This document shows, one piece after another, positions 1-60,475 of a stretch of 64,000 bases of DNA. The notes under the pieces are model-generated. The model had not been told where the DNA came from. It did no database searches and saw nothing but the letters and a program-made list of their open reading frames with translations. Position 1 is the stretch's first letter. The number at the start of each line of letters is the position of its first letter. Where the stretch lies: contig NIVC01000463.1 in the NCBI GenBank assembly GCA_002269645.1, forward strand, positions 1 to 64,000, given 5' to 3'. This DNA is from Macrostomum lignano. Taxonomy: Eukaryota. The position numbers and the translations under genes are program-made.

Positions 1-879
1 TTCTGCTTATGCATTGTTTTTTTATAACTGCGCTTAATTGCTTATAATTTGGAAGCTGGTTTAAATAGGCAGTTTCTTTAAGTCGCCCGCTTTTTCTTGT
101 ACGCTTTTGAGGAACTGCGGTCAGTAAACTTCCTGCTAGGTAGAAAATTTTATCTATTTTCAGGGTTTTTCTGGTACGATAGTTTCAAAAATTTTATTTT
201 AGGTGCAGATGCAAAGCAAGATCCCCTAATGTGCATGTTAAGTTCAATAAATCGACGGCTATACTTACTCTTTTGTGAATTCCATCTATCAATCCTTGTA
301 GTTTACTTCGAACGCAAACTGTTTCTTCAATCCATAATACTAGACTGTTCTAACAGGCGTTAATTGAAAACAACACAGAACTAAAATCTATGTTAACAAA
401 TTTGCTTAAGCACACGAAGCAGTTACGTCGTAAGAGATAAGCATGAGAGCTAGGGCAATTTTGTAAGAGAATCTATTTTTTAACAGATTCGGCAGACAGC
501 ACAGCAACAATACACGCCCACTCAGGCACGCGTTAGGCGCATCGCTCAAGTGTATAGTGTACACACAGACTATTTTACCCCCAGTTACTTCGAGACTGTG
601 CTCATGAGTGTACTCGCCAAAAATTAAAAGAAAAACTGAGAAGTTGGGGTTTGAAAAATGAAATTAGCGCACAAGATGTAGTACGCGTTTTGTAGTGAAG
701 GTCAAACTGTACAGTGTTCTGCTAAATTTGGACAGCTTCAAAAAGGAAAAGAAGAGAAGAGAGTGGGTGGCTGCCTGCCTGTGTCACACCACCCGATGTT
801 TTGCGCATTAGTACGAAGGTATAATACACTGGAGCAGTCCGAAAGCTTGCATGCATATATATATAATACACATGTAGTG

Positions 880-1565
880 GGGTCGCCATCATAAGCTCGA
901 AAAATCACAAGCTCGAAAAATCATATCGTCGAAACTGATTTAGCAACCACCATCACAATCTCGAAAAGTCATAAGCTCGAAAAATCATAACGTCGAGAAG
1001 TTTAGCAACCACCATCACAAGCTCGAAAAATCACATCGTCGAAAAGTTTAGCAAACATCATCACAAGCTTGAAAAGGCACAAGCTCTAACCCTAACCCCA
1101 AGGCACTAACCCTAACCCTAAGGCACCAGTACCCTAGCCTAACCCTGAACCATAACCCTAACCTAACCCTAAACCCTTAACTTAAAGGCACTAGTTCTAA
1201 CCCCGACCCTAACCCTAAGCCCTAACCCTAAGGCACAAGCTCTAACCCTAACCCTATTCAAGCTTGTGATGGTGGTTGCTAACCTTTTCGACGATGTGAC
1301 TTTTCGAGCTTGTGAATTTTCGAGCTAATGATGGTGGTTGCTGGACTTTTCGACGATATGATTTTTCGAGCTTATGACTTTTCGAGCTTGTGATGGTGGT
1401 TGCTAAACTTTTCGACGATGTGATTTTTCGAGCTTATGATTTTTCGAGCTTGTGATGGTGGTTGCTAAACTTTTCGACAATATGATTTTTCGAGCTTATG
1501 ACTTTTCGAGCTTGTGATGGTGGATGCTTTTCGACGATGTGATTTTTCGAGCTTGTGATGGGCCC
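880..1565. mobile_element. Non-autonomous foldback/MULE-like inverted-repeat element (MITE) with internal telomere-like tract
   Basis: Left arm (CATCACAAGCTCGAAAA / CATCGTCGAAAAGTTTAGCAACCAC subrepeats, 880-~1080) is the reverse complement of the right arm (~1260-1565). Termini GGGTCGCCATC...GATGGGCCC. Direct repeat CATGTAGTG at 871-879 and 1566-1574 (9-bp TSD). A related copy lies at 56143-56511. Confidence 0.8.
1085..1255 (+). repeat. Degenerate (CCCTAA)n telomere-like tract inside the foldback element
   Basis: Many CCCTAA/CTAACC units interspersed with AGGCAC. Confidence 0.8.
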
Positions 1566-2347
1566 CATGTAGTGTATCCTGTTGTTCTTGCGGTCACCGT
1601 ATCCAGATCCAGATCTTCTGTGCTATGATCTCTGTTGGATATAGGAATTTGTTGATAAACGTATTAGATGTAAAATGCTTCTGAAAATATGAAGTTTCCT
1701 TGCTTGATAATATCTTCCATAGGTTGTGAGATCTTCCCTGCTAAATATAAGAGATTTTTCGGCTAGATGTGATAAAATATCATAAAAGTGAATCATCTCT
1801 ATACTATCTTTTCGAAATAGCTTAGTCTTAACTATACACAAATCTGCATTAAAAAGTACAAGCCAAAATTTGAACAGTAGAATCAGTTCTTATAATATGA
1901 GCTTTATTTACGTCAAAAATCATTGCAAATTTCATCCCACTAAGCCAGTTATTTTATGGTGGATCAATCAATCGATAATAACTCTGCTACCCTGCACTGC
2001 AGAATCCGTCTTTCTTACCGAAAAACTTAATAAGAAACAGAAAGCAGAGTGAAAATCAAAGGATTGCAAGGCTTGGCCTATCGGCTTTAATAAATATTTT
2101 ATTATATATATCAGAGACAGCCGTAGGGGATCTCGCGAACTCATTAGTTATTCCTCTGATCAGATTAAAATTATAAATTCAGAGCAAATAGTGGCTGCAT
2201 ATTGTGTAATTTTAAATCGAAAAATACAAGAACTGTTTCTTGATAAATCTTAGTTTATATCGTATAGGTTTCATCAAATTTATTGATACCGCCAATATAT
2301 TGGTATCAAGCCAAAGCCAAGCCAAACTTATTGAACTTTGGCCAGAT

Positions 2348-2938
2348 TTAGATTTCTCTCATTGCTTTATGCAGGTATTCGTAGCCTCGCTTGCTCAGCA
2401 TGGCGTCCCTCAGGTAGTTGTAACCTCGCTTGCTCAGCATGGCGTCCCTCAGGTAGTTGTAACCTCGCTTGCTCAGCATGGCGTCCCTCAGGTAGTTGTA
2501 GCCTCGCTTGCTCAGCATGGCGTCCCTCAGGTAGTTGTAGCCTCGCTTGCTCAGCATGGCGTCCCTCAGGTAGTTGTAGCCTCTCTTGCTCAGCATGGCA
2601 TCCCTCAGGTAGTTGTAGCCTCGCTTGCTCAGCATGGCGTCCGTCAGGTAGTTGTAGCCTCTCTTGCTCAGCATGGCATCCCTCAGGTAGTTGTAGCCTC
2701 GCTTGCTCAGCATGGCGTCCGTCAGGTAGTTGTAGCCTCTCTTGCTCAGCATGGCGTCCCTCAGGTAGTTGTAGCCTCTCTTGCTCAGCATGGCGTCCCT
2801 CAGGTAGTTGTAGCCTCGCTTGCTCAGCATGGCGTCCCTCAGGTAGTTGTAGCGTCGCTTGCTTTCGTGAGCCTCGACCGTCAAGAAGCAGACAACGGCA
2901 ATGACTGCCATAGCAAAAGCCGTTCCATAACGCACCAT
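2348..2938 (-). CDS. Multi-copy neuropeptide precursor (196 aa)
   Basis: ATG and hydrophobic signal peptide MVRYGTAFAMAVIAVVCFLTVEA. Then 12 KR-delimited 13-aa units (1x RYNYLRDAMLS, 9x GYNYLRDAMLS, 2x GYNYLTDAMLS) and a diverged last peptide GYEYLHKAMREI before the stop. Minus-strand AATAAA at 2279-2284. Possible upstream UTR exon donor (CAG|GTAAG) at ~3468. Confidence 0.9.
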   Translation of the reverse strand: MVRYGTAFAMAVIAVVCFLTVEAHESKRRYNYLRDAMLSKRGYNYLRDAMLSKRGYNYLRDAMLSKRGYNYLTDAMLSKRGYNYLRDAMLSKRGYNYLTDAMLSKRGYNYLRDAMLSKRGYNYLRDAMLSKRGYNYLRDAMLSKRGYNYLRDAMLSKRGYNYLRDAMLSKRGYNYLRDAMLSKRGYEYLHKAMREI

Positions 2939-3821
2939 GCTTGAATTAGCGTCAACGATATCTCAAGGTGCACGCGGTAGTTAATCCTTCGTGTGGATGT
3001 TGCTGTTGTTAAGAAGGAAATGGTGGCTAGATTTACTTACTCGCAGCTTATATTTTACAACTTAATCCTGTGGGGTGCATATTTAATGAGAGAGTCGGTA
3101 AAATATGCCAATGTGCCATATGCCGTATGGCTCGCGGTGCGTCACCGATTAATAGGAAAAATCATTTTTATGTTTGCTCTTGTTTTTCTAATCTATCGAA
3201 TTTGAGACCGCGTCACTACGACCAGTTCGATCTAGCAAGCACTAAACTGAATCCATTATGCTAATCCATGCTCCATCCAAGCCTCAAGGGAACTCAAGCT
3301 GCTGGCTTGGATAATATCAAATAATTTGATTTATTTGCCGCCTAAAGCGCGAATTTTTTGCAGCTATGAAAAACTGAGCGAATTTCATGATGCAGCCTGT
3401 CTGAGAGCATGTATTAATATGCTCTGTTGATCTTTCTATAACATTCAATATATATCAGCAAAACTTACCTGTTAGTACGTTGAGACAAGCTCCAGTTCAA
3501 GAGAAGTTCTGGACTAAAAACCCGCTTCGTGCCGCTGGAGGACCTGCGTCTCGAGCTGTTATAAGCTTTCAATAACAAAATTTGAGAGAATGAAACGACT
3601 GAACTGGATTTGATGCCAACCGATCGTGATTGGTTCTGGAGTTAATGAAAGCTTTGAACACGGGATGAGAGTGGGCTGTGAGGAGATTTTTCTGTCCTTA
3701 GGTAGTAGGGAATTCTCCTTCTCTAAAAATCCAAAGCCTGATGCTTCTAATCCATCTCAGACTAGGGAATTTAAAAAACCACCGCTTTTCAAAGATAGCA
3801 AATCCTTTATTAATAAGTCTT

Positions 3822-3853
3822 CTGTCTCTATCTGTCTGCCCGTCTGTCTGCCC

Positions 3854-3945
<92 letters not shown>

Positions 3946-3972
3946 TGGTGTCTGTCTTAGTGTCTGTCTTAG

Positions 3973-4022
<50 letters not shown>
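3822..4022. repeat. (CTGT)n microsatellite
   Basis: Direct inspection. Confidence 0.95.
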
Positions 4023-4023
<1 letters not shown>

Positions 4024-4374
4024 GTAACTAGCTGGCTGCTCTTAGGAACGGCTAGTTTGATTGTGCGTCTCAAAATTGCTCATAGAGTTCCACTCGAGAT
4101 GGCCTCAGGCATGCTCAATTTTCTTCACTTGGGAGTTCGCAGGTGCTCAAGAAATGTTTCATTAATTCAAGCCTTCAAAAGACTCGAACTAGTTTGCTTA
4201 CAAGCGTACTTACAACGTACTTCCCTTACTTTCTCAGAACCGTTAAAATCGGCTCATCTTCTCCGAGTTCTTATTAACCTGCCTTGATTCATTCTATAAG
4301 ACTCTGTCGAATCTTTTTTCACAAAATTTTCAGATTTTTTTGATGAGACCAACATGTCCTAATGGTTCTATCTG

Positions 4375-5806
4375 CATCTATCTACACGGTGTCACTGTCG
4401 ATTGTGTCTGATCTACACTGTCACTGTCGATTGTGCCTGATCTACACAGTGTCACTGCCGATTGTGTCTGATCTACACAGTGTCACTGTCGATTGTGTCT
4501 GATCTACACAGTGTGTCTAATCTACAAGGTGTCACTGTCGATTGTGTCTGATCTACACAGTGTGTCTAATCTACAAGGTGTCACTGTCGATTGTGTCTGA
4601 TCTACACAGTGTGTCTAATCTACAAGGTGTCACTGTCGATTGTGTCTGATCGACATACACAGTGTCACTGTCGATTGTGTCTGATCTACACAGTGTCACT
4701 GTCAATTGTGTCTGATCTACACAGTGTCACTGTCGATTATGTCTGATCTACACGGTGTCACTGTCGATTGTGTCTGATCTACACGGTGTCACTGTCGATT
4801 GTGTCTGATCTACACTGTCACTGTCGATTGTGTCTGATCTACACTGTCACTGTCGATTGTGCCTGATCTACACAGTGTCACTGCCGATTGTGTCTGATCT
4901 ACACTGTCACTGTCGATTGTGTCTGATCTACACTGTCACTGTCAATTGTGTCTGATCTACACAGTATCACTGTCGATTGTGTCTGATCTACACAGTGTCA
5001 CTGTCGATTGTGTCTGATCTACACAGTGTCACTATCGATTGTGTCTGATCTACACAGTATCACTGTCGATTGTGTCTGATCTACACAGTGTCACTGTCGA
5101 TTGTGCCTGATCTAGACGGTGTCACTGTCAATTGTGTCTGATCTACACAGTGTCACTGTCAATTGTGTCTGATCTACACGGTGTCACTGTCGATTGTGTC
5201 TGATCTACACAGTGTGTCTAATCTACAAGGTGTCACTGTCGATTGTATCTGATCTACATACACAGTGTCACTGTCGATTGTGCCTGATCTACACGGTGTC
5301 ACTGTCGATTGTGCCTGATCTACACAGTGTCACTGTCGATTGTGCCTGATCTACACGGTGTCACTGTCAATTGTGTCTGATCTACACAGTGTCACTGTCA
5401 ATTGTGTCTGATCTACACAGTGTCACTGCCGATTGTGTCTGATCTACACAGTGTCACTGTCGATTGTGTCTGATCTACACAGTGTCACTGCCGATTGTGT
5501 CTGATCTACACAGTGTCACTGTCGATTGTGTCTGATCTACATAGTGTCACTGTCGATTGTGCATGATCTACACAATGTCACTGTCGATTGTGCCTGATCT
5601 ACACGGTGTCACTGTCAATTGTGTCTGATCTACACAGTATCACTGTCGATTGTGTCTGATCTACACAGTGTCACTGTCAATTGTGTCTGATCTACACAGT
5701 GTCACTGTCGATTGTGTCTGATCTACATAGTGTCACTGTCGATTGTGCATGATCTACACAATGTCACTGTCGATTGTGTCTGATCTACACGGTGTCACTG
5801 TCAATT
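4375..5806. repeat. 31-bp minisatellite GTGTCACTGTCGATTGTGTCTGATCTACACA
   Basis: Period 31 (for example 5401 to 5432). Confidence 0.95.
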
Positions 5807-5965
5807 GCCTCTGGTACCATTGTCGACAGTTTGAGACTTTGAGACTTTTTGATGCCATCTTTTTGAGTAGCTGGATCTGGTCTCTTTCTAAGTTTCGTAC
5901 TATACTGTTTTGTTTAAACTTCTGAAAGAATTTCTGATTTTTATTATCCAGGAGTATTATAGTCT

Positions 5966-8766
<2,801 letters not shown>

Positions 8767-22344: not shown

Positions 22345-22571
22345 TCAATCCACAGTAGAATACTGTAGCTGTTGTAATTCTTCAACTAGGCCACCAATCG
22401 CAGTGGACACATCGTCCGCGGCATGGAACAGATGCCGCACTGGGTCTTGCTGTTGATGCTGTTGTTGCTGTTGTTGCTGATGTTGCTGATGATGTTGATG
22501 ATGCATAATTTGCAAACTATGGTAAGGATGCTGCTGCTGCTGTTGCTGGGCATAATAATGAGGATATTGTG

Positions 22572-22603
<32 letters not shown>

Positions 22604-25600
22604 ATGTTTGGCAGAGCTGCTGGCACCGAACGCGAGGCGGCCGCGGCAGACTGAGCCCGATAATAGGTATCGGCCATAGACAGTCTGGCCATCAGCTGTT
22701 CAAGCTGCTGCATAAGATCTCGCCTGGACTCCTGCAGACGGCCCATCCTGTCCTCAAGTTGATCTTTGCGCTGTCTGAGATGTCGCAACTCGCCAAGGAG
22801 GCTGTTCTGATTTATGATCAGCTGATCCTGGCTGTGACTCTGCTGTTCCCGCAGCTGAGCCGACTGCAATTTTAACTGTTCAATCTCTGCAAGCATGCGT
22901 TCGTTTTGACGTTCCAAGTCGCGAATTTTGCGCTCCTGAGCTCGCGCCTGCGCCAGATCGGCAGCCGAAGCGGCTAAAGCGGCCGCGCCGCCATCGCCGC
23001 CAATGGCGCCGACTGGAAAAGCGCCGGAATTGGCGCCGGCTGCGCCATTTAATTGTAGAGCGGCCGCGTACCTTGAGGGTTGGCGCCGAGGGGGCTTCAT
23101 CAGAAAAGAACGTCTGTTTTCTAAGAATGGCGTCTATTTCTAAGAATGGCGTCTATTTCTAAGAATGGCGTCTGTTTCTAAGAATCACGTCTGTTTCTAA
23201 GAATCACGTCTGTTTCTAAGAATCACGTCTGTTTCTAAGAATCACGTCTGTTTCTAAGAATCACGTCTGTTTATAATAATTACGTCTGTTTCTAAGAATC
23301 ACGTCTGTTTCTAAGAATCACGTCTGTTTATAAGAATTACGTCTAGTCCAAGAATTACGTATGTTTCTAAGAATGACGTCTGTTTCTATGAGTGACGTCT
23401 TTTTTCTAAGAATCATGTCTGTTTCTAAGAATGACGCCTGTTTCTAAGAATGACGCTTGTTTCTAAGAATGACGCCTGTTTCTAAGAATGACGCCTGTTT
23501 CTAAGAACGACGCCTGTTTCTAAGAATGACGCCTGTTTCTAAGAATGACGCCTGTTTCTAAGAATGACGTCTGTTTCTATGAGTGACGTCTATTTTCTAA
23601 GAATCACCTGTTTCTAAGAATCACGTCTGCTTCTAAGAATGATGTCTATTTTCTAAGAATTACGTCTGTTTTTAGAAACGACGTCTATTTCTAGGAATGA
23701 CATCTGTTTTCTAAGAATAAAGCTTAGTTCTTAAAATTAACTCCATTTTTAAGAACATTTTTAGTACAAAACTTTCTAATAATATTGTAGCTGTTTTTGA
23801 AACAACGAAATTTTTATAAAAAAAGAAACGACTTGCTCTATTTAAAAAAAACATTACTTTTTGTCGATATTAAACCTTCAAAAAGAGACTCAGGTTGGTC
23901 TTCAAGAAACACGGTCAAGAAGAGAGTAATTTTTGACCCCCTACCTGGCAATTAACCGATGTTCGTCATCCAATCGCTGTTGCTGCTGTTGTTGTTGCTG
24001 CTGCCCAGACACAAAGGCATTCGTAGTCACAGTCAGTGCACCAGTAGCGAGACTTGCTGGAGCCCACGCGTTAATCCCTTGCTGCTGCTGGTGCTGCTGA
24101 TGCTGCACTGCTTGCATAGCCAGCCCATCCGACATCATTGGCTGAGCTATTGAAGCCGCAGAAAAAGGCGCAATACTAACAGAAGCAGCTGTAGCAGCAA
24201 TTGATGGCATTGCTGAAGTCCCACCGTCAACATGCTGCAGACTGTGCGACAGCTGGGTGAGCTTGCCGGGTCTGCCCAGGCTGCCTCCTGCGGGTGGTTG
24301 TGGGGGGGAGGCCCCGGGTTCGATTCCTCGTTAATTTCGAAGGACCCGGGCTCGATACCAGATATGGCGTAAGAGGACCCAGGTTTGATTCCGGGTAGGG
24401 TGTCAGAGGGCCCGGGTTTGATTCCATGTAGGGTGTCAGAGGGCCCGGGTTTGATTCCAGGTATGGTGTCAGAGGGCCCGGGTTCGATTCCAGGTAGGGT
24501 GTCAGAGGGCCCGGGTTCGATTCCAGGTAGGGTGTCAGAGGACCCGGGTTCGATTCCAGGTAGGGTGTCAGAGGACTAGTTTTAAACTTAGAAAATCTGA
24601 TGTAACTAAGGAAAATAGGAGAGGGTGCATCAGTCTATATCTGCACTTTATTATTGACAGTACTTGGATTGCATTAGAGCACAGTCTTAGACTATGCATG
24701 CATATATATATATATAATGCATATGGATAGTTCTCAATTTTCACCCAAAACTATAAAAGCAAACGCCCAGCAAAGTCAAGCATTCGTAATGAAATCAAGG
24801 AGAGACAGGGGGTGAGAGAGGAATTCGGAGAAATTCAATTTACTGCAACTCTGAGCGACACTGCCACAACCGCAGCCATGGGGCTAACAAATCACTTTTT
24901 TTGAGACTGTGCACCGCTTCATTAGCCCTTTGGGACAGGGCGATTGACAGTAAATAGTGCATTTTAGCTGCGGGATGGATAGAGTACCTCATAACTCATA
25001 GTTATCCCGAATCTCCCAGATCCCCTCCTAGCCATCCAAATCTCCCAGATCCCTTCATAGTCATCCCAAATCTCCCAGATTCCCTTCTAGTCATCCCAAA
25101 TCTCCCAGATTCCCTTCTAGTCATCCCAAATCTCCCAGATTCCCTTCTAGTCATCCCAAATCTCCCAGATTCCCTTCTAGTCATCCCAAATCTCCCAGAT
25201 TCCCTTCTAGTCATCCCAAATCTCCCAGATCCCCTCCTAGCCATCCAAATCTCCCAGATTCCCTTCGTCATCCCAAATCTCCCAGATTCCCTTCTAGTCA
25301 TCCCAAATCTCCCACATTCCCTTCTAGTCATCCTAAATCTCCCAGATCCCCTCCTAGCCATCCAAATCTCCCGAATCCCCTCCTAGTCATCCCGAATCTC
25401 CCGAATCCCCTCCTAGTCATCCCAAATCTCCCGAATCCCCTTCTAGTCATCCCAAATCTCCCAGATCCCCTTATAGCCATCCGAAATCTCCCAGATCCCC
25501 TCCTAGCCATCCCAAATCTCCCAGATCCCCTTCTAGTCATCCGAAATCTCCCGAATCCCCTTATAGTCATCCGAAATCTCCCGAATCCCCTTATAGTCAT

Positions 25601-29103: not shown

Positions 29104-32100
29104 CAGACAGACAGACACAAACAGACAGACACACAGACAGACAGACAGACACACAGACAGACACAAACAGACAGACACAAACAGACAGACAGACACACAG
29201 AAGCGGCACTCACGGAGCGGGGCAGCAGCATTGAGGTGAGGCGGGAGGTGAAGCTCTCCGACCGTTTAACCGGACGCGGCGGTGGCCGGCTGTTTTGCTG
29301 CTTCTGTTCGGCGGATTGCGGCGCAGAAAAAGCAGAAGAATTCGATGCGGAAGAAGACAAAACAGCCGAAAAAGATTGCGGCAGAGAAGGCGGAGACGGC
29401 CGGGTCTTCAAGCAGCGCGGGCAGACAACTGCGGCGCGAGAAGCTGGGAAAGCTTCATCGCTGGGATTAACCGCTACAGAAGTTTTACCTTCCTTATTTG
29501 GCATGATCTGCTTTTGGACAGATTAAATAGAAAGCTGCAGAATCTCTCGATTTAAACGGGACTGAAGTTTTGCGTCTGTGTGTCCCGGCAGCCAGTCGCC
29601 CCTCCGCCAGCTTTTATCCCCTTTCTATACAGCCAGCTGACTGTGCAGGTCGGAGAGACAGAAAAAACGGGAAGACACCGAAGAAAGAAATGATGTAGAA
29701 GCCTTGCCCAGCAACACCCTCACTCTAACTGAATCTGGTGCAGGTAAAAAAAGTTGCACGCAGAAACCCACCATCTGGCTCTTGTTGGACCTGCACGGTT
29801 CGAACATTCGGGCCCAATAACGGTAGCCCCACCCCCTGCAGCTCCCCTCCACCTTCTTCGCCATTCTAAATTATCCCCAACTACCTTAGCAACACCCCCT
29901 GTACAACGGGAAAGATTTTCCCTATAAACCTTATGCCTATGAAGTTGGAGAGAGGAAGAGAGAAACGTCAAGGAGATAAGATAAGCGATCCGGATATGAA
30001 AGGTAAACGAAGGGAAACTTTGGGCTTAGTAGAGCTTTTATATGCTTGTATGTGTAACGGATTCTAACACGTGTTTTCAATTAATATGCGTGAGCCAGTC
30101 AGTCAGTCAGTCAGTCAGTCAGTCAGTCAGTCAGTCAGTCAGTCAGTCAGTCAGTCAGTCAGTCAGTCAGTCAGTCAGTCAGTCAGTCAGTCAGTCAGTC
30201 AGTCAGTCAGTCAGTCAGTCAGTCAGTCAGTCAGTCAGTCAGTCAGTCAGTCAGTCAGTCAGTCAGTCAGTCAGTCAGTCAGTCAGTCAGTCAGTCAGTC
30301 AGTCAGTCAGTCAGTCAGTCAGTCAGTCAGTCAGTCAGTCAGTCAGTCAGTCAGTCAGTCAGTCAGTCAGTCAGTCAGTCAGTCAGTCAGTCAGTCAGTC
30401 AGTCAGTCAGTCAGTCAGTCAGTCAGTCAGTCAGTCAGTCAGTCAGTCAGTCAGTCAGTCAGTCAGTCAGTCAGTCAGTCAGTCAGTCAGTCAGTCAGTC
30501 AGTCAGTCAGTCAGTCAGTCAGTCAGTCAGTCAGTCAGTCAGTCAGTCAGTCAGTCAGTCAGTCAGTCAGTCAGTCAGTCAGTCAGTCAGTCAGTCAGTC
30601 AGTCAGTCAGTCAGTCAGTCAGTCAGTCAGTCAGTCAGTCAGTCAGTCAGTCAGTCAGTCAGTCAGTCAGTCAGTCAGTCAGTCAGTCAGTCAGTCAGTC
30701 AGTCAGTCAGTCAGAGTAGAACTGCTCTGCCCTCTGACACTTTACACAGGCTATTCAAATGCACAGATTCAAGTTGAAGAGTCTCTGATAACATTTCAGT
30801 AAACGGATTAATAATAAAATTATTCCAAAAACAACTGATTCGCAAACAATGAATAGTTAGCCAAACTAAAAGAAGAAAATGCCTGCAATATAAAAGCATA
30901 GAAACAGAAGCTATGAAGCAAAACCGATGAACGAGATGGATAGAAAAGCACAGAGCAACAGGCCTAGCAAGCGGAACAGCAATGTTTGCTGTATATAAAT
31001 ATTTATACCGAGTCCCATGCGGATAAAAGTGGAGCATAGGCTTAAAAGGTTTACAGCTTATTCATTCTATTCTAGGACTTTACAAGTGCCCAACTACATA
31101 GTATTAAACCAACCGCCCTGTTGAGCGAGGACGCGGTTCATTCATTCTCATTTTTCAAGAGTTGCTGCACTTTATACACACCGCAAATTTAGCGATTGAA
31201 TGTCCACTTAAAGCTCCACAAAAAAAGCAATCACGTGGCTAACTGATCCTCAATCTCGTCTCCGACACGTACTCGCTTCATCCCCAAGCTCTGCCAATGC
31301 AAACAAAGTTCATGGCATGTTTCCAAGCGTTATATGAACTGCTGCTATAGGATTTATTACAATACGGTAGCTCAAAGGACTTATTGATCACTAGAAGGAA
31401 TATAAAATAGAGAAATGTTCTATGAAGAACTGATACTTTCTTCGTAGCGAGATTAGAATTTCTGCGATTGATATGAGGGTTGCTGCGATCGATATGGAGG
31501 TTGCTGCGATCGATATGGGTGGGGGTTGCTGCGATCGATATTGGGGTTGCTGCGATCGATATGGGTGGGGGTTGCTGCGATCGATATGGGTGGGGGTTGC
31601 TGCGATCGATATGGGTGGGGGTTGCTGCGATCGATATGGGTGGGGGTTGCTGCGATCGATATGGGTGGGGGTTGCTGCGATCGATATTGGGGTTGCTGCG
31701 ATCGATATGGGTGGGGGTTGCTGCGATCGATATGGGGGTTGCTACGACCGATATGGGTGGGGGTTGCTGCGATCGATACTGGGGGTTGCTTCAATCGATA
31801 TGGGGGCCACTTAGATCGATACTGGGATGTTGCTGCAATTGTGATTGAAATTTCTGCTTTTCTGAAGCCTCTAAGATCTTAGATGGAGGTTAATTTATAA
31901 ATTTAATTTTTTTCTGAGACTAAGATTAGGGGGTTACAATAATCGACGCAATGGAGTTTCTAAATTGAAACACAGGCATCGAGAGAGTACAGACATGCCT
32001 GACGATTAGAAAGTCAAAGGGCCCGCTGTACACCCTGTGTGAGCGTGTGTATTCGAGTGCGCGCCTAAGTACAGTATTGGCGCGCATTTATGCGTGCTCA

Positions 32101-33160
32101 GGTGTCAGCGGAATAAGCAGAATTGCCTCAGCGCTGGGCATAACCCACTTTATGTAAACTTCGAGCAACCTGCTGGCCAAGCGCCACTCACCCAGCTGGT
32201 GTACTCCTTAACCTCGTGGTTGAGCGTGTGCCCGCCAGCAGTCACCCCGGTCCAGAAGCACTCCTGGCACAGATTAAACGAACCGATGCACTGTTGGCAT
32301 TTGTACCGAAAGCCCAATATCGGCTCCTGGCCGCACACCGAGCACCTCACTGGATGGCTGGCGGTAGTCTGCAGCCGATGAAATGTCGTCAGCCAGAGCA
32401 GCGGCTGTGGAGCGGCGTCTTCGGCTAGAAGAATTTCCAAGAAATGCAACAGACCGGCGCACTGAGACAGAAAGCAGCAGGTGTCCGGCTGGTAATAGAA
32501 ATTATTCTGTTCGAATACTCCGGCAGGTAAGGATAGCAGTTCGATGGTGTAAGCCTGGGCTTTAGTGCGATCTAGCACCCCAGTAACCGGGTCGCATATG
32601 AGCGTGAAATGATAGCGCAATTTATCAATAGGCTTAGCGTTGCACAGTACAGACATGGCCACTTTAGCGCCTAGTGCGGTCATTCGCTGGCCGAAGCCGA
32701 ACTGCGATCTGGCAAACAGCCAAGCGTGCAGCATGCCGGCCAGTTCCTGCAGGTAGTTCTCGTGAGCGCCGGCCACTTCGGCTGAGTTGGCCAGCCCGAG
32801 CCGCTTGTTCAACTGATCGTACAGGGTGCATAGCAACTGTTCGAGCTGTTCCGGGCTCAGCTCGGCATCATATTCGAGCACGTGAAAATGGGCCAGTCTG
32901 AAGCATTCGATCAAGGTGTACAGGTCAACCAGGTGGAGGCTGACTCGACGTTGGATGAAGCGCAGTTTCATTGCTGTTCGATAGGCGGCGAAACGGATGC
33001 GATCTAGCTGGGACTGTTCTGTTTGAGTTGCATGAGGATAGAACGCTAATTGCAGATCCAACTAAAACTATTACTTTAAAATTAAATAGGGTTTTGAAAA
33101 AACCTGCTACTTACTTAAATCCTGCAGTAGCTTTTTGTAGTACACGGATGATGATGTCAT
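22345..33160 (-). CDS. dyb: Dystrobrevin
   Basis: complement(join 33160..33115, 33018..32192, 26134..25786, 24287..23945, 23071..22345), phases consistent; the exon-2 acceptor could alternatively be ~33046. Hallmarks: [19 protein letters not shown] (EF-hand region), ZZ finger HPVRCSVC...GFRYKCQQC...LCQECFW...[31 protein letters not shown], and coiled coils [36 protein letters not shown]. No WW domain or spectrin repeats. Confidence 0.93.
23110..23720. repeat. 19-bp minisatellite TTTCTAAGAATCACGTCTG
   Basis: Direct inspection; intronic. Confidence 0.9.
24305..24575 (+). repeat. 33-bp minisatellite built from a tRNA T-arm/B-box (GGCCCGGGTTCGATTCC)
   Basis: Period 33 (24481 to 24514). Each of ~8 units carries GGTTCGATTCC or a close variant. 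Confidence 0.85.
25003..25770. repeat. 30-bp minisatellite TCATCCCAAATCTCCCAGATTCCCTTCTAG
   Basis: Period 30; intronic. Confidence 0.95.
26215..26700. repeat. 20-bp minisatellite CACTAAGGCGCCAAATTGTC
   Basis: Direct inspection. Confidence 0.9.
27490..27660. repeat. 21-bp degenerate repeat TTGGGGAATTCTATTGAAAC
   Basis: About 8 imperfect units. Confidence 0.75.
28950..29200. repeat. (GACA)n microsatellite
   Basis: Direct inspection. Confidence 0.95.
29214..29507 (-). CDS. Probable alternative (cassette or alternative first) exon of dystrobrevin, 98 codons
   Basis: AAGCAG| acceptor, open frame IMPNKEGK...CPRC...[17 protein letters not shown], consensus donor TCC|GTGAGT. Phase 0/0 matches the host intron (TSW|KQPGK). 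Confidence 0.55.
30096..30711. repeat. Perfect (CAGT)n microsatellite, 154 units
   Basis: Direct inspection. Confidence 0.98.
31470..31830. repeat. 25/19-bp minisatellite GTTGCTGCGATCGATATGGGTGGGG
   Basis: Direct inspection. Confidence 0.9.
31985..32140 (+). mobile_element. SINE family fragment (central/3' part)
   Basis: ACATGCCTGACGATTAGAAAGTCAAAGGGCCCGCTGTACACCCTGTGTGAG core shared with the other copies. Confidence 0.75.
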
Positions 33161-35200: not shown

Positions 35201-38200
35201 ATGCCTATTGATTCTAGAATGCAGAGTTTTGAAATAGGCATCAACCTGCGAGTAACAGAATGCATGAATCAGGGTATGCGTGCATACATGGAAGATTTTG
35301 CAACATATTACTTTGAAAAGTGCCCAGACAAGCCTGAATCTGATCGCATTAAATTTGCCTACTTTGGTGTTTTTGATGGTCATGGTGGAGCTGAAGCAGC
35401 TAAATTTGCTAAGTCTCATCTATTGAGTGAAATAAAGAAGATTGATGGCTTTTGGTCAAATGATGACAATGCTGTTCTTGAAGCTATAAGACAAGGCTTC
35501 ATTAATACCCACAAAGCAATGTGGAATGAGCGAGGTAAGCTCTATACTAATTTTTAATTTTTGTTTAAAAAATGCTAATAGGCCTAGCATTGACTAAATC
35601 TTTTTGCATTTTATAAGGCTTATTTTAAAATATAAAAATGTTAGTTCCAATCAATTACTTTTTATTTTTTACTCTATTGTACAAAGCATTATATAAACCA
35701 TTAGGGCCTAGGCATTATATTATAATAAACTATTTTAAATATATGGTTTAATTTTTGATAAAAATAAAGAATATTATTATTAAAAAGTAAGCAAAAAGAC
35801 AGATATAATTATTAATGTGACTATGAGCATAAAATAAAATATAAAATATATGATGAACTATGCCTTATATAGGATATACTATTATATATATTATGATATG
35901 TCATGTCAATACACTACACTGTCTAAATCTATATTAATATATGGCACCTTTTTTGTCTAAACCAAATGCATATCTAGGTCTAAGAGAAAAACTTTAAGTG
36001 TGCTATATGATTTTAAAATAGAAAATTGCATACAATTTTTATTATAAAATATACAAGTTTTTGTTTGGCATTTGAATTTTATAAGCAATTCTTTATAGGC
36101 TTTTCTATACAAAGTAATGAATATCTAAAAAGAAATGTTATAATTCTTTCTTTAATATTAAAATAGTACTCATTGACTTTGCTTTTAAATTCATAACAAA
36201 TGCAATATGTTTATACTAGATGGATCTAGTTAAACAAGTTTGTTAGTAAATGTGCATAACTAAATTACTTTATCAACAATATCTAGGCTATTAGCTAATA
36301 AGTTAACAACTATAGATATATAAAGTATTAACAATGATGTATTATTATGTATTATGATGTATTAATGTATTATTACTTTTCTATTGTTCTTCTTTCTTCT
36401 AACTGCCTACAAATCTATTACAATTATTTCCCTAATTTATCCTAAAAATAGCAACTAATCTACCCCAAAAATTGCCAATTCTAATGAACAATCACCTTCA
36501 AATTGCTGAGGCTAACTATGAGGTCCCAAATCTATTGAAAGAATTGCTACAAATCCACCCTAGAAATAGCCCTAAATTCACTAAAAAACTCTAATTAATT
36601 ACAATTATTGCTAAGGCTCACTCACTAAAATTGCCCTTATAGATCCCAAGAATCATCCTTAATTCTTCATTACAATCGCTCTTAATCCCCCATTGGAATC
36701 ACCCTAATCCACCCCAATAATCACTCTAATCCACCTCAAGAATCACTCTAATCCACCCCAATAATCACTCTAACCCACCAGGAATCGCCCCTAATCTCCC
36801 CATTTGAATCACTAATCCACCACAAGAATCGCTCTAATCCACCCCAGAAATCGCCTCTAATCTTCCCATTTGGATCACTGTAATACACCCCAAGAATCGC
36901 CCCTAATCCCCCAAAAAGAATTGGCTTTGATCCACCCCAGGAATTGCCCTTAATCTCCCTTTAGAATCGCCCTTGATCCCCACTAGAATCACCGCTTAGA
37001 GTCCCCATGAACCGAGCCGAACTCTTAAATGCGGAAGAATATTTCTTGACCAATTTAGAATCTCTATAAAATCAAGCTTAAGATAGGCTAACATAGTTAA
37101 CCAATCAATGTTGAATAGCCACAGAGTCACGTGACGCACCCACAATTGTCCCCTACAACAACCCGCCAGGCAACTGGGCCAAGACTTCGCGCGGTTTAGA
37201 CAGCACAGCCGGCACCACAGCCTCCATTGCTATTGTGCGCAATCGTAAACTCTACACTGGCCACGTTGGCGACTCGGCCATTGTGCTGGGCTGTCGGGAC
37301 ACCCGCGAACAATCCCGCGATCTGTGGCACGCTCAAGCACTCACGGTTGAGCACAAGCCGTCAAACCCGAAGGAGCGAGAGCGTATCGAACGGGCCGGCG
37401 GCAGTCTGATGCGCAAAGGCGGCGTCTATCGGGTTGTGTGGCGCCGGCCAGCTCAGTCGAGCGGCGCCGATTCGTCTCCTCAGCAACAGCAGCAGCGCCA
37501 GTTATTTGAATCGGTGCCATTCCTAGCCGTAGCCCGTTCCCTGGGCGATTTATGGTCCTACGATAAAAACTCTTCGGAATTCCACGTTTCCCCAGAGCCG
37601 GACGTGCAGTGCATCAATTTGGATTATAGCAAGCACAAGTGCCTCATATTGGGTTCCGACGGATTGTGGAATATGGTTGCCCCGATAGCGCCGTTGAGAT
37701 GGTGCACATCTGCGAGAGATCCACAGAGAATAAGGTATTGTTATTGGAATTTGCTTTGTTTATATAAGATTTCTATAAGAAAATGGGTCTGTATTCTAAG
37801 AAACAGAGCTGCTATTTCAAGAAATTGGGTCTGTATTCTAAGAAACAGAGCTTCTTTTCCGAAAACTGGGTCTGTATTCTAAGAAACAGAGCTGCTATTT
37901 CAAGAAATTGGGTCTGTATTCTAACAAACAGAGCTTCTTCTCCGAAAACTGGGTCTGTATTCTAAGAAACAGAGCTGCTATTCCAAAAAACTGGGTCTGT
38001 ATTCTAAGAAACAGAGCTACTATTCCAAGAAACTGGGTCTGTATTCTAACAAACAGAGCTTCTTTTCCGAAAACTGGGTCTGTTTTCTAAGAAACAGAGC
38101 TTCTTTTCCGAAAACTGGGTCTGTATTCTAAGAAACAGAGCTGCTATTCCAAAAAACTGGGTCTGTATTCTAAGAAACAGAGCTTCTATTCCAAGAAACT

Positions 38201-39391
38201 GGGTCTGTATTCTAAGAAACAGAGCTTCTATTCCAAGAAACTGGGTCTGTATTCTAAGAAACGGAGCTGCTATTCCAAGAAACTGGGTCTGTATTCTAAG
38301 AAACAGAGCTGCTATTCCAAGAAATTGGGTTTGTATTATTTAACTCAAGAAACCGAGTTACTGTTCTAAGAAACCCGGACACAATTTTAACAAATTAAAT
38401 ATCCATTTAAAAAAGCGGGGACCATTTTAAGAAACAAAGTTTCTGTTTAAGAATTAAGAGACAAAGACATTCAGAGATTAAACCTCTTTGTCTGCCGCCC
38501 TCTCTGCCGCAGGTATTCACCGACCCGGACGTGCCGCAGAATTTCTTTTACAATCCAAGCGGCAGCCTGGTTCAGATGGCGATGCAACGCTGGATGCGAG
38601 CCGACCTGCGGGCTGACAACATCACCGCTCTGGTGGTGATGCTGGACCCGCCGGGCAGGCCCATGTCGCAGCTGCGCAGCGAACAGCGCGACTTGACGCT
38701 AGCCAGGCTGGGACTGCAGCGAGAGTCGCCGACTGTAGTTGAAGGCGGCTTCTCAGACGATGCCGAACGACAGCAGAGTCAGCAGCAGCAGCCGCTTCGC
38801 CTGCACGATCTGTTGGTCCAGTGCGACAAATGGCAGAACGCCAACAGGCCCGGCGCCAATGCTCACGGCCACGCCAGGCACGCGCCGGCAGCCGCCGTCG
38901 AGCCGAGCGGCAAGCTGACTGGCCAGGCAATGGTGAAACGGCAGGCCGGCAGCGATCGGACCCTGTTCTCGCCCGGCTTCAAACGTTCCCCGGCTCCGCC
39001 CCCGTTGTCGGGCTCGGCGACAGCGTCGGCTCCAGCATCGCAGGCTGCTGGCGTCAGCTTCTACCTGCCAACGACTCCAACAATTGATTCTACTTCTCCG
39101 TCGGCAAAGCGGCAGACTCGATCTACCGCGGCGTCTCCTGCTGCTGCTGCTGCCGCCGCCGCGCCGTCAAGTCCTGCTGGTAAAAAGCAGCAGAAACAGC
39201 AAAAGCAGCAACAATTGAAGCTGAAAAAGTCCGGCTCTGCCGCTGCTGCTGCTACTGCTGCTGCTGCTTCCACTTCTGCAACACCGGTTGCTGCTAAACG
39301 CCGGCGCCTGTCAATGGGCTCCTCGGTGCCGGGAGCTTCGGCTGTTGAAAGCTGTTTAAAACGGCTTCGTAAGCGAAAGAGTGTGCGCTAA
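35201..39391 (+). CDS. PPM1D: Protein phosphatase 1D (Wip1, PP2C family); 1-nt frameshift at ~37680-37683 as assembled
   Basis: join(35201..35534, 37170..37734, 38513..39391). Motifs QGMRAYMED, FGVFDGHGG, W.KT..GL.ST.GTTAS, HVGDS..VLG, LT.EHKP, RVVWRRP, PFLAVARSLGDLWSY....EF.VSPEPDV, ILGSDGLWN, RADNIT. Low-complexity basic C-tail. Confidence 0.95.
36640..36990. repeat. Degenerate ~23-bp repeat (AATCGCCCTAATCCCC...)
   Basis: Direct inspection; resembles the reverse complement of the 39590-40215 array. Confidence 0.65.
37780..38370. repeat. 42-bp minisatellite GGGTCTGTATTCTAAGAAACAGAGCTGCTATTCCAAGAAACT
   Basis: Period 42; fills PPM1D intron 2. Confidence 0.95.
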
Positions 39392-42697: not shown

Positions 42698-50775
<8,078 letters not shown>

Positions 50776-52825: not shown

Positions 52826-55257
<2,432 letters not shown>

Positions 55258-59900: not shown

Positions 59901-60475
59901 GGCGTGAGGTACATGACGGTGTGCCGTCCGAACAGAGAACCAGCCGAACTGGAAGTGTCGTACATCTCCGGCCGGTCGAGTATCTGGAAGTACTTTGACT
60001 TGGTGACGACAAATTGTTTGTTGCCTTTCATCATGGTATGCTGCTGCTGAATAGCGTTCGGGTCCGGGTCGAAGCGAAGCAGACTATTCGTGACCTTGTC
60101 GGACAGAACACGATCGAGTTCCTTCTCGTTCTCGCTGACTACGGTGTTAATTAGCCAAGTAGTTGTCGGATGATACATGTCGAAAAATCTTGGCACCATT
60201 AAGTAGGGCGTTTTATTGGCCTTCTCAAATTTTTGCAATTTCCGCGCGGTATGCTTCCGGTACCTGTGCACCTGCGGCTCCGGCAGGCGGACCATGGTTC
60301 GAGTCATGCCGACTTCTGCTCGATTAAGTAAATAATTGGAAACACAAACTCGACAATTCGCTTTCTTATAGCTCTTAGCGGCACTCTCGTTAATTAACCA
60401 ACTATTGCACGAACTTTGATTGAAGTTGGCGAAAGGTGCCCCCCCCGAGGCCGATTGTACAGAGGCCATAGACAT
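56928..60475 (-). CDS. Uncharacterised ~700-aa protein with one ankyrin-like motif
   Basis: complement(join 60475..59805, 58700..58340, 57992..56928), GT-AG, phases 2 and 0 consistent. Three long GC3-rich open exons. YLTPLGLAIYLGKMKAARQLVEC resembles an ankyrin repeat; acidic then basic C-tail. Confidence 0.8.
58051..58215 (+). mobile_element. SINE family copy with tRNA-like head (internally deleted)
   Basis: GGGGGAGAGTGGCTCAGTGGTAACCGCGCCTGACT (A box), then the GTGTACATGCCTGACGATTAG...GCTGTACACCCTGTGTGAG core. Confidence 0.75.
58810..59730. repeat. 20-bp minisatellite GGGAGACAACAGAGTGACAG
   Basis: Fills intron 58701-59804. Confidence 0.95.

What the first reader, a model, noticed from the sequence alone, without database searches (positions are those of the whole stretch)
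2348..2938. Single-exon neuropeptide precursor yielding 13 non-amidated GYNYLRDAMLS-type peptides
Seen: signal peptide, 39-bp units each beginning with KR, synonymous variation between units (for example TCG/TCT on the + strand at Arg codons), a diverged terminal peptide GYEYLHKAMREI, and a polyA signal. These features separate it from the many non-coding minisatellites here. Established: KR-flanked tandem paracopies are the hallmark of prohormone-convertase substrates. I do not recognise the peptide. The aromatic N-terminus and unamidated hydrophobic C-terminus loosely recall pedal-peptide/orcokinin-like families (inference only).
Basis: partly seen in the sequence, partly recalled or inferred. 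Interest (0 to 1): 0.75.

Follow-up and report, generated by a model that had tools for sequence, protein, structure and literature searches.

The report
Orphan multi-copy secreted peptide gene (flatworm)
This is a small gene of the flatworm Macrostomum lignano that encodes a signal peptide followed by 13 near-identical short peptides separated by Lys-Arg cutting sites, the usual layout of a neuropeptide or hormone precursor; the peptide matches no described family, and whether it is made in neurons is untested.

Summary
Window 2348-2938 (-) is an uninterrupted 196-codon ORF: a signal-peptide-like N-terminus (MVRYGTAFAMAVIAVVCFLTVEA|HES), 12 homogeneous 39-bp units encoding KR+(G/R)YNYL(R/T)DAMLS, one diverged unit (KR+GYEYLHKAMREI), then a stop. 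A TATA-like box lies upstream and AATAAA downstream. The window is Macrostomum lignano contig NIVC01000463.1:1-64000. 36% of it is tandem repeats and 4 of the unit's 6 frames are open, so the ORF alone proves little. What sets this array apart from 15 control arrays is an ATG plus hydrophobic leader directly before it, one KR per unit, GC of 0.46/0.33/0.92 by codon position, and variation that is mostly synonymous only in this frame. Two more genomic copies exist (13 and 8 units), and both keep the frame. GenBank's transcript-derived annotation calls the gene at all three loci; one model (PAA57452.1, Mlig028694.g1, "hypothetical protein") is a repeat-collapsed transcript. No homologue was found among 1.84 billion representative proteins, 5.8 billion clusters or JGI metagenomes, and no paper searched mentions it. 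The pedal-peptide/orcokinin link is not supported. Verdict: a real, lineage-restricted multi-copy peptide precursor, a new member of a known kind. A neuronal role is likely but unproven.

The parts
3047..3052 (-). TATA-like box (TATAAG), 114 nt upstream of the ATG; candidate core promoter
   Evidence: Read; identical in the other two genomic copies. Function not tested.
2348..2938 (-). Complete coding sequence, 196 codons plus TAA, no intron in the CDS. Kozak-like context (A at -3, G at +4); in-frame TGA 9 codons upstream of the ATG
   Evidence: GenBank-derived gene call of 196 aa at this locus and at NIVC01001526.1.
2870..2938 (-). Predicted signal peptide MVRYGTAFAMAVIAVVCFLTVEA: n-region with Arg3, hydrophobic core residues 6-19, V at -3 and A at -1 before the predicted cut
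   Evidence: Kyte-Doolittle profile peaks at 3.2-3.5 over residues 10-19 and drops after residue 18. The -3/-1 rule was applied by eye; SignalP was not available.
2861..2869 (-). Three-residue spacer HES between the predicted signal cleavage site and the first KR
2393..2860 (-). Twelve homogeneous 39-bp units, each KR + 11 residues: (R)YNYLRDAMLS x1, GYNYLRDAMLS x9, GYNYLTDAMLS x2
   Evidence: GC by codon position 0.46/0.33/0.92. Across the 31 units of the three copies, 7 sites vary: 4 synonymous and 3 non-synonymous.
2351..2392 (-). Diverged terminal unit KR + GYEYLHKAMREI. It keeps G-Y-x-Y-L-x-x-A-M, including a synonymous GCC>GCA at Ala
   Evidence: identical in copy C.
2348..2350 (-). Stop codon TAA
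2279..2284 (-). Polyadenylation signal AATAAA, 64 nt after the stop
   Evidence: Read; conserved in copies B and C. The polyA site itself was not observed.

Best explanation
This is a real, transcribed, single-coding-exon gene of Macrostomum lignano (gene cluster Mlig028694) that encodes a secreted polyprotein.

Proposed mechanism, step by step. The 23-residue signal peptide takes the protein into the secretory pathway (inferred from sequence). A prohormone convertase of the PC2/PC1 type cuts after each of the 13 Lys-Arg pairs, and a carboxypeptidase trims the basic residues (inferred from established prohormone processing). None of the sites has the R-x-x-R furin motif, which points to the regulated pathway rather than the constitutive one. 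The products would be 9 x GYNYLRDAMLS ([M+H]+ 1302.615), 2 x GYNYLTDAMLS (1247.561), 1 x YNYLRDAMLS or RYNYLRDAMLS, 1 x GYEYLHKAMREI (1509.752) and the tripeptide HES. All would have a free C-terminus, because Ser, not Gly, precedes each KR.

The peptides most likely act as extracellular signalling peptides, and a neuropeptide is the most probable kind.

The array is kept homogeneous and changes copy number by unequal exchange, like the minisatellites around it: 13, 13 and 8 peptides in the three genomic copies.

My estimates: a real secreted-protein gene about 0.85-0.9; cleaved at KR into 11-mers about 0.75; neuronal about 0.5-0.55.
For: (1) Anatomy: ATG in good context, a hydrophobic leader, KR once per unit, a diverged last unit directly followed by a stop, a TATA-like box and AATAAA.
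(2) Controls within the window. Of 119 ATG-ORFs of 50 aa or more, this is the only one that combines a strongly hydrophobic N-terminus with many dibasic sites (13). Of 16 arrays with a period divisible by 3, only 5 are open in any frame. None of the others has an ATG plus leader in front, one dibasic site per unit, or marked 3-periodic GC.
(3) Codon signature: GC 0.46/0.33/0.92 by codon position in the unit. Bona fide exons in the window also have position 3 above position 2.
(4) Variation among the 31 units of the three copies is 4 synonymous to 3 non-synonymous in this frame, against an expected synonymous fraction of 0.22 (P=0.048). This is the best of the six frames. Copy B differs from the window copy by one synonymous change in the CDS.
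(5) Three loci keep the ORF intact with different unit numbers.
(6) Transcript-based annotation. The Mlig_3_7 gene models were built only from RNA-seq and transcript assemblies (PMC5730564). The model at copy C (PAA57452.1, 53 aa over 396 nt) skips exactly 234 nt = 6 x 39. That is what a repeat-collapsed de novo transcript mapped back to the genome would give.
(7) M. lignano has a PC2 homologue with a nervous-system in situ pattern (PMC4490696). Non-amidated KR-flanked peptides have been confirmed by mass spectrometry in the planarian Schmidtea (PMC2953531 supplements).
(8) Multi-copy peptide precursors restricted to one species are common in neuropeptidome surveys (PMC6188537).
Against: I saw no direct RNA reads, no expression site and no peptide. 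There is no homologue in any other species, so there is no evolutionary conservation to lean on. The synonymous-excess test is weak: 7 sites, P=0.048, uncorrected for six frames. The unique coding parts are identical between copies A and C, but the flanks differ by only 1-3%, so this is not significant. The gene sits in a stretch that is 36% tandem repeats, and its array behaves like its non-coding neighbours in copy-number change. The signal peptide was judged by heuristics, not by a trained predictor. The gene was not found in the supplementary expression tables of four M. lignano papers, though these tables may be truncated or list only selected genes.
Confidence: 0.6

Rival explanations
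1. The gene and its KR processing are real, but the peptides are made by non-neuronal secretory cells (epidermal or rhabdite glands, pharyngeal, adhesive or prostate glands). They would be released to the outside or to a mating partner as a pheromone, a seminal-fluid peptide or a defensive peptide, not as a neuropeptide.
For: Nothing in the sequence says 'neuron'. Multi-copy KR-delimited precursors also serve for pheromones and skin or defence peptides in other organisms (established knowledge). The gene is lineage-restricted, as fast-evolving reproductive and defence genes often are. In planarians several prohormone genes are expressed in glands, gut, pharynx or reproductive organs as well (PMC2953531).
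Against: The peptide is neutral (pI 5.8), so it is not a typical cationic antimicrobial peptide. The sites are plain KR without a furin motif, which fits PC2, and the PC2 homologue of M. lignano shows a nervous-system pattern. The gene was not found in the supplementary files of the reproduction-related and positional gene study checked (PMC7336406), which is weak evidence.
Confidence: 0.2
2. It is one more minisatellite that happens to be open in frame next to an ATG. Any transcript would be noise, and the GenBank models would be TransDecoder calls on such noise. No functional peptide is made.
For: 36% of the window is tandem repeats. 4 of the 6 frames of the unit are open. The array changes copy number like its neighbours. 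There is no homologue anywhere. The selection tests are weak.
Against: This rival would need several independent features to coincide by chance, in the same frame of the same strand: a hydrophobic leader with a V-x-A cleavage motif directly upstream, a KR in every unit, a stop right after a diverged unit that still keeps GYxYLxxAM, GC3 of 0.92, a Kozak context, a TATA-like box and AATAAA. None of the 15 control arrays and none of the other 118 ATG-ORFs shows the combination. All three copies keep the frame.
Confidence: 0.1
3. It is a secreted repetitive protein that is NOT cleaved at KR, for example a structural or matrix-like protein with a 13-residue repeat.
For: Processing was not observed. 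Many of the HMMER look-alikes are long proteins with 13-residue repeats and no cleavage.
Against: An invariant KR at the same place in all 13 units (with CGA/AGA synonymous changes preserving Arg), a KRR at the first site, a small total size (196 aa), and no Cys, Pro or Gly-rich structural motif.
Confidence: 0.07

Closest known systems
Lineage-specific multi-copy peptide (MCP) proneuropeptides, as catalogued in xenacoelomorphs (Thiel et al. 2018, PMC6188537) and in planarians as 'secreted peptide prohormones' (spp genes; Collins et al. 2010, PMC2953531)
   Same: A signal peptide followed by many dibasic-flanked copies of one short peptide; often no orthologue outside a narrow clade; non-amidated products such as SPP-16 QSNPYFLSDIRSI and SPP-18 GYHFFRL confirmed by mass spectrometry.
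   Different: The peptide sequence GYNYLRDAMLS matches none of them. The DNA units are 95-100% identical, which points to very recent homogenisation. Expression and peptides are untested.
Pedal peptide / orcokinin-type precursors (e.g. Elysia crispata KAK3754513.1 = P0084, PFDPLGSGFIS x n; Haliotis XP_046370799.2 = P0096)
   Same: A 13-residue period (11-12-mer + KR), many tandem copies, and in the Elysia P0084 copies with free C-termini. These precursors appear in the HMMER list of the query.
   Different: The defining x-F-D-x-L/I-...-G-F-x motif is absent. The weak scores (E about 4e-4 to 8e-4) come from the shared KR/G periodicity, as they do for unrelated MIP precursors (P0045, P0058). No homology is supported.
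Flatworm SPP-18/SPP-19/NPP-28 peptides ([G/A]YHFFRL)
   Same: A non-amidated flatworm peptide starting G-Y-x-aromatic-hydrophobic-R after a KR site (GYHFFRL against GYNYLRD).
   Different: Those precursors carry one copy (plus one related peptide in SPP-19) followed by a Cys-containing C-terminal peptide. There is no tandem array, and the peptide ends at RL. The HMMER search did not connect them. The resemblance covers only 3 identical residues.
Unnamed JGI metatranscriptome protein P0046 (170 aa; signal peptide + KR-GLDHIGSSLLD x 6-7)
   Same: The same architecture, the same 11-residue non-amidated peptide length, and the shared pattern G-hydrophobic-[DN]-x-[IL]-x-x-[SA]-[LM]-L-[DS].
   Different: Only 2 of 11 peptide residues are identical. 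The E-value (1.6e-7) is inflated by repetition, and the organism is unknown. This is a lead, not a demonstrated relative.

Membership tests
Prohormone-convertase-processed multi-copy peptide precursor (proneuropeptide class) | N-terminal signal peptide | tested here: met
   Arg3, hydrophobic core residues 6-19 (7-residue-window Kyte-Doolittle mean up to 3.46), V-E-A before the predicted cut. Heuristic only; no trained predictor was available.
Prohormone-convertase-processed multi-copy peptide precursor (proneuropeptide class) | Repeated short peptides each flanked by dibasic (KR/RR) sites | tested here: met
   13 KR sites at an exact 13-residue spacing; Arg kept through the CGA/AGA synonymous change.
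Prohormone-convertase-processed multi-copy peptide precursor (proneuropeptide class) | The gene is transcribed | tested here: inconclusive
   Indirect only. GenBank models at all three loci come from a purely transcript-based annotation, and the 53-aa model skips exactly 6 units, like a collapsed transcript. No reads were seen. The databases showed no Macrostomum hits even for the dystrobrevin exon, so the lack of Logan (assemblies of public sequencing runs) hits is uninformative.
Prohormone-convertase-processed multi-copy peptide precursor (proneuropeptide class) | Expression in neurons or endocrine cells and packaging in dense-core vesicles | not testable with these tools
   No expression data for Mlig028694 in the text or supplements searched.
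Prohormone-convertase-processed multi-copy peptide precursor (proneuropeptide class) | Mature peptides detectable; lost on PC2 knock-down | not testable with these tools
   Predicted masses are given. A PC2 homologue exists in M. lignano.
Amidated neuropeptides (FLP/NPF and most flatworm npp families) | Gly immediately before the basic cleavage site (amidation donor) | tested here: not met
   Ser precedes KR in all 12 homogeneous units; the last peptide ends in Ile before the stop.
Pedal peptide / orcokinin family | Peptide motif with N-terminal x-F-D-x-[LI] and C-terminal G-F-x | tested here: not met
   GYNYLRDAMLS has neither. True members P0084 and P0096 align only through the KR period.
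SPP-18/19 / NPP-28 ([GA]YHFFRL) family of flatworms | A single [GA]YHFFRL copy after the signal/pro region, followed by a Cys-containing C-terminal peptide | tested here: not met
   The precursor sequences in the PMC2953531 supplements have a different architecture; there is no Cys-containing tail and no FFRL here.
Non-coding minisatellite | No frame-specific signal: even base composition over the three positions, variation indifferent to any frame, no gene signals at the borders | tested here: not met
   GC 0.46/0.33/0.92 by codon position; the control arrays show far weaker differences between codon positions (at most 0.23). Synonymous excess only in this frame (P=0.048, weak). ATG plus leader and stop/AATAAA sit at the borders.

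The most novel reading that the evidence does not exclude
The gene is a very young, Macrostomum-restricted signalling-peptide gene. Its peptide array arose from, or evolves exactly like, the minisatellites that fill this genome. Unequal exchange changes the peptide dose (13, 13 and 8 copies in three recently duplicated loci), while homogenisation keeps the units 95-100% identical. It would then be a tractable case of the birth and dosage evolution of a neuropeptide gene, in an animal with working transgenesis and RNAi.
Probability: 0.2. Interest if true: 0.6.

Novelty: new member of a known kind. Interest (0 to 1): 0.35.

Why it matters
If confirmed, it adds an undescribed, non-amidated peptide (GYNYLRDAMLS) to the flatworm peptide repertoire. 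Pattern searches aimed at amidated peptides (G-[KR]-[KR]) would miss it. One of its three GenBank models is truncated to 53 aa because the repeats collapsed in the transcript, which shows how short-read transcriptomes under-report multi-copy precursors. M. lignano has transgenesis and RNAi, so the peptide's cells and function could be found quickly. The copy-number difference between the duplicated loci offers a small natural experiment on peptide dosage. It does not open a new category: orphan multi-copy peptide precursors are found in most invertebrate neuropeptidome surveys.

Tried and rejected
(1) Word-indexed homology search with the full ORF gave only P0001, a Logan ORF with RGYNF repeats. 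It has no signal peptide and no dibasic sites and lies in an AT-rich repeat. I rejected it as chance.

(2) The full HMMER scan of 1.84 billion representatives gave 97 hits. On inspection all except P0012 are proteins with a repeat period near 13 residues. They include unrelated real precursors (MIP, pedal-peptide-like) and translated repeats. I rejected them as periodicity artefacts.

(3) The Pfam hits of the ORF (YqbF, zf-NOSIP, DUF559 and others) have no single stretch that passes. They are repeat-summed artefacts.

(4) Searching with the non-repetitive P0012 against 5.8 billion clusters and JGI metagenome contigs found nothing but P0012 itself.

(5) Literature: the peptide strings, the gene and accession ids, and the supplements of PMC5730564, PMC5816591, PMC12896417 and PMC7336406 gave nothing. 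McVeigh 2009 and Koziol 2016, the flatworm neuropeptide catalogues most likely to include M. lignano, are not held. Prior description there cannot be excluded.

(6) Comparing the copies for purifying selection: the unique coding parts are identical, but the flanks are only 1-3% diverged, so there is no power.

(7) The telomere-like repeat near the gene suggested a chromosome end. I rejected this because copy C continues into a cPLA2 gene.

(8) Calibration of the negative Logan result: even the dystrobrevin exon finds no Macrostomum proteins, so absence there says nothing about transcription.

Full report
**1. What is in the sequence**

On the minus strand, window 2348-2938 is an uninterrupted ORF of 196 codons. 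Translated unit by unit, it reads:
- MVRYGTAFAMAVIAVVCFLTVEA-HES;
- twelve 39-bp units, each encoding KR plus an 11-mer: RYNYLRDAMLS once, GYNYLRDAMLS nine times, GYNYLTDAMLS twice;
- a diverged unit, KR-GYEYLHKAMREI, followed by TAA.

Tandem Repeats Finder (TRF) reports the array at 2372-2863: period 39, 12.6 copies, 95% matches, no indels. A 33-nt unit pattern finds 12 matches where shuffles give none, and none elsewhere in the window.

Several gene signals flank the ORF (read):
- The ATG has A at -3 and G at +4.
- An in-frame TGA lies nine codons upstream.
- TATAAG lies at 3052-3047.
- AATAAA lies at 2284-2279, 64 nt past the stop.

**2. Where the window comes from**

The exact protein is called on two contigs of GCA_002269645.1. 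The reverse complement of window 1-7938 equals NIVC01000463.1:1-7938. NIVC01 is the Mlig_3_7 assembly of the free-living flatworm Macrostomum lignano (PMC5730564), and the organism name is confirmed by the GenBank and UniProt entry of a paralogue. That paper reports 15% simple and tandem repeats and 180 Mb of blocks at least 95% identical, because the sequenced line carries extra large chromosomes. This explains both the repeat-rich window (36% tandem repeats) and the extra gene copies.

**3. Is it more than a minisatellite that happens to be open?**

The question is fair. Four of the six frames of the unit have no stop codon, and the window holds dozens of arrays. Four lines of evidence say it is more.

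(a) Of 119 ATG-initiated ORFs of 50 aa or more in the window, this is the only one that combines a strongly hydrophobic N-terminus with many dibasic sites (13).

(b) Of 16 arrays whose period is a multiple of three, only five are open in any frame. None of the others has an ATG plus leader directly in front or a dibasic pair in each unit.

(c) GC content by codon position in the unit is 0.46/0.33/0.92. The control arrays show far weaker differences between positions (at most 0.23). Genuine exons in the window (dystrobrevin, PP2C and others) show the same direction, with position 3 above position 2.

(d) Across the 31 homogeneous units of the three genomic copies, seven sites vary. In this frame four are synonymous (CGA/AGA, GGC/GGT, TAC/TAT, GAC/GAT) and three are not (G>R in unit 1, giving KRR; R>T; L>P in one unit of copy C). 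The expected synonymous fraction is 0.22, giving P=0.048. No other frame does as well. This is weak on its own, with few sites and six frames tried.

In addition, the diverged last unit keeps G-Y-x-Y-L-x-x-A-M while 15 of its 39 bases differ. Taken together, the chance-ORF reading needs too many coincidences. I give it about 0.1.

**4. Other copies, and evidence of transcription**

Copy B (NIVC01001526.1; L002) is 99.7% identical over 1.2 kb. Its only coding difference is a synonymous AGA/CGA.

Copy C (NIVC01002487.1; L005 3001-3396) has the same leader, seven homogeneous units and the same terminal unit, 131 aa in all. Its flanks differ from the window copy by 1-3%.

All three copies share the same neighbourhood of minisatellites. 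Those arrays also differ in copy number between loci: the 31-bp array has about 47, 52 and 10 copies, and (ACAG)n has 49, 54 and 121. So the coding array expands and contracts like its neighbours, but always in frame, because the unit is 39 bp.

The annotated product at copy C is PAA57452.1, 'hypothetical protein BOX15_Mlig028694g1', UniProt A0A267E9S5. It is 53 aa long: leader, first unit and last unit. It spans 396 nt of genome, so the model skips 234 nt = 6 x 39. The Mlig_3_7 annotation was built only from RNA-seq and a de novo transcriptome mapped back to the genome. This 'intron' is therefore best read as a short-read transcript in which the repeats collapsed. That is indirect but real evidence that the locus is transcribed.

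I could not see reads. The protein databases returned no Macrostomum hits even for the conserved dystrobrevin exon. The absence of hits from Logan (assemblies of public sequencing runs) is therefore uninformative.

**5. Relatives**

None was found.
- The word-indexed search gave one chance hit, P0001, a translated AT-rich repeat.
- The exhaustive HMMER scan of 1.84 billion representatives gave 97 hits. Apart from P0012, which is the copy-C model, they are proteins with a repeat period of about 13 residues. They include true but unrelated precursors: MIP (Lygus AHK09726.1 = P0058; P0045), pedal-peptide/orcokinin-like (Elysia P0084, PFDPLGSGFIS; Haliotis P0096), and an amidated GHPSFDEFIAG precursor (P0015). 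The rest are many translated repeats.
- The non-repetitive P0012 finds only itself among 5.8 billion clusters and nothing in JGI metagenomes.
- P0046, from a metatranscriptome, has the same build and a faintly similar 11-mer (GLDHIGSSLLD). Only 2 of 11 residues are identical, so it is a lead only.
- The Pfam hits of the ORF are repeat artefacts with no passing stretch.

**6. Literature**

No held paper contains the peptide strings or the gene, protein or UniProt identifiers. Four M. lignano papers' supplements do not list Mlig028694.

The planarian catalogue (PMC2953531) has no such peptide in its text or supplements. Its nearest is GYHFFRL (SPP-18/19; NPP-28 in schistosomes). That peptide comes from single-copy precursors with a Cys-containing tail, a different architecture.

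The same supplements show that non-amidated, KR-flanked peptides are genuine mass-spectrometry-confirmed products in flatworms. Thiel et al. 2018 (PMC6188537) show that species-restricted multi-copy peptide precursors are a regular finding.

McVeigh 2009 and Koziol 2016 are not held, so a prior mention there cannot be excluded.

**7. How it most likely works**

- Shown: the ORF, its repeat anatomy, three genomic copies, and the existence of annotation.
- Inferred from sequence: co-translational removal of a 23-residue signal peptide (V at -3, A at -1).
- Inferred from established prohormone biochemistry: cleavage after each KR by a PC2/PC1-type convertase and trimming by a carboxypeptidase.

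None of the sites has an Arg at P4, so they are not furin sites. This favours the regulated secretory pathway. M. lignano has a PC2 homologue with a nervous-system in situ pattern, whose knock-down is lethal in juveniles (PMC4490696).

The predicted products and [M+H]+ values are: GYNYLRDAMLS 1302.615 (x9), GYNYLTDAMLS 1247.561 (x2), YNYLRDAMLS 1245.593 or RYNYLRDAMLS 1401.694, and GYEYLHKAMREI 1509.752. There is no amidation, because Ser precedes each KR. The main peptide is neutral (pI 5.8), which argues against a cationic antimicrobial role.

Whether the producing cells are neurons is the main open point. I put neuronal at 0.5-0.55 and a non-neuronal secretory cell at about 0.2-0.25.

**8. 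Verdict**

The precursor architecture holds. 'Neuro' is unproven, and the pedal-peptide/orcokinin link is rejected.

This is a lineage-restricted multi-copy peptide precursor. It is already in GenBank as hypothetical proteins, once in truncated form, but was not described as a peptide precursor in anything I could search. It is a new member of a known kind. Interest is moderate to low (0.35): useful for flatworm neurobiology and as a caution about repeat collapse in transcriptome-based annotation, but not surprising in kind.

The most novel reading still open is a very young peptide gene whose dosage evolves by minisatellite dynamics (probability about 0.2).

Noticed in passing
window 886-1558; L002 6379-7133; L005 4184-4800: An interstitial telomere-like block, (CCCTAA/TTAGGG)n of about 170 bp (window 1086-1256). 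It is flanked on both sides by arrays of the same ~62-bp satellite in opposite orientation (886-1082 and 1257-1558), which gives a palindromic arrangement. The same structure lies about 0.8 kb downstream of the peptide gene in all three genomic copies. In copy C the contig runs on to a cPLA2 gene (C2 + PLA2_B), so this is not a chromosome end. Two of the three contigs end at or near this structure.
   Followed up: partly
window, whole: 36% of the 64 kb is tandem repeats by TRF, mostly minisatellites of 13-62 bp roughly every 1-2 kb. There are also perfect or near-perfect tetranucleotide runs: (CAGT)155 at 30096-30714 with 100% matches, (GATA)98 at 54701-55091 and (TAAC)88 at 49451-49801.
   Followed up: partly
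L005 3001-3396 (NIVC01002487.1): The GenBank model PAA57452.1 (53 aa) of the third gene copy skips exactly six 39-bp units. The genomic ORF is 131 aa. This looks like an annotation artefact of a repeat-collapsed transcript.
   Followed up: yes
window 32150-33061 (-) and 22345-23100 (-): A dystrobrevin-like exon (EF-hand_2, EF-hand_3, ZZ; best hits animal dystrobrevins at 35-41% identity). Further along is a poly-Q, coiled-coil-looking ORF on the same strand that may be the C-terminal part of the same gene.
   Followed up: partly
window 37235-37882 (+) and 38531-39391 (+): A PP2C phosphatase exon (Pfam E=5e-30). Its ORF runs into the 42-bp minisatellite at 37777-38337. The next long ORF on the same strand is Ala/Ser/Gln-rich and has no Pfam match.
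   Followed up: no
window 45976-46587 (+): An ORF with a [19 protein letters not shown] motif that recalls, from memory, the RNase H domain of retroelements. There was no Pfam match at E<=0.01.
   Followed up: no
window 56928-57998 (-) and 59801-60475 (-): Two long ORFs (356 and 224 aa) of normal-looking composition. GC by codon position is coding-like (0.54/0.39/0.74 and 0.47/0.39/0.65). Neither has a convincing Pfam match, so both are unidentified.
   Followed up: no
P0046 (JGI metatranscriptome contig, 969 nt): An unnamed 170-aa protein with a signal peptide and 6-7 KR-flanked copies of the non-amidated 11-mer GLDHIGSSLLD. It has the same build as the gene studied, a faintly similar residue pattern, and an unknown source organism.
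   Followed up: partly
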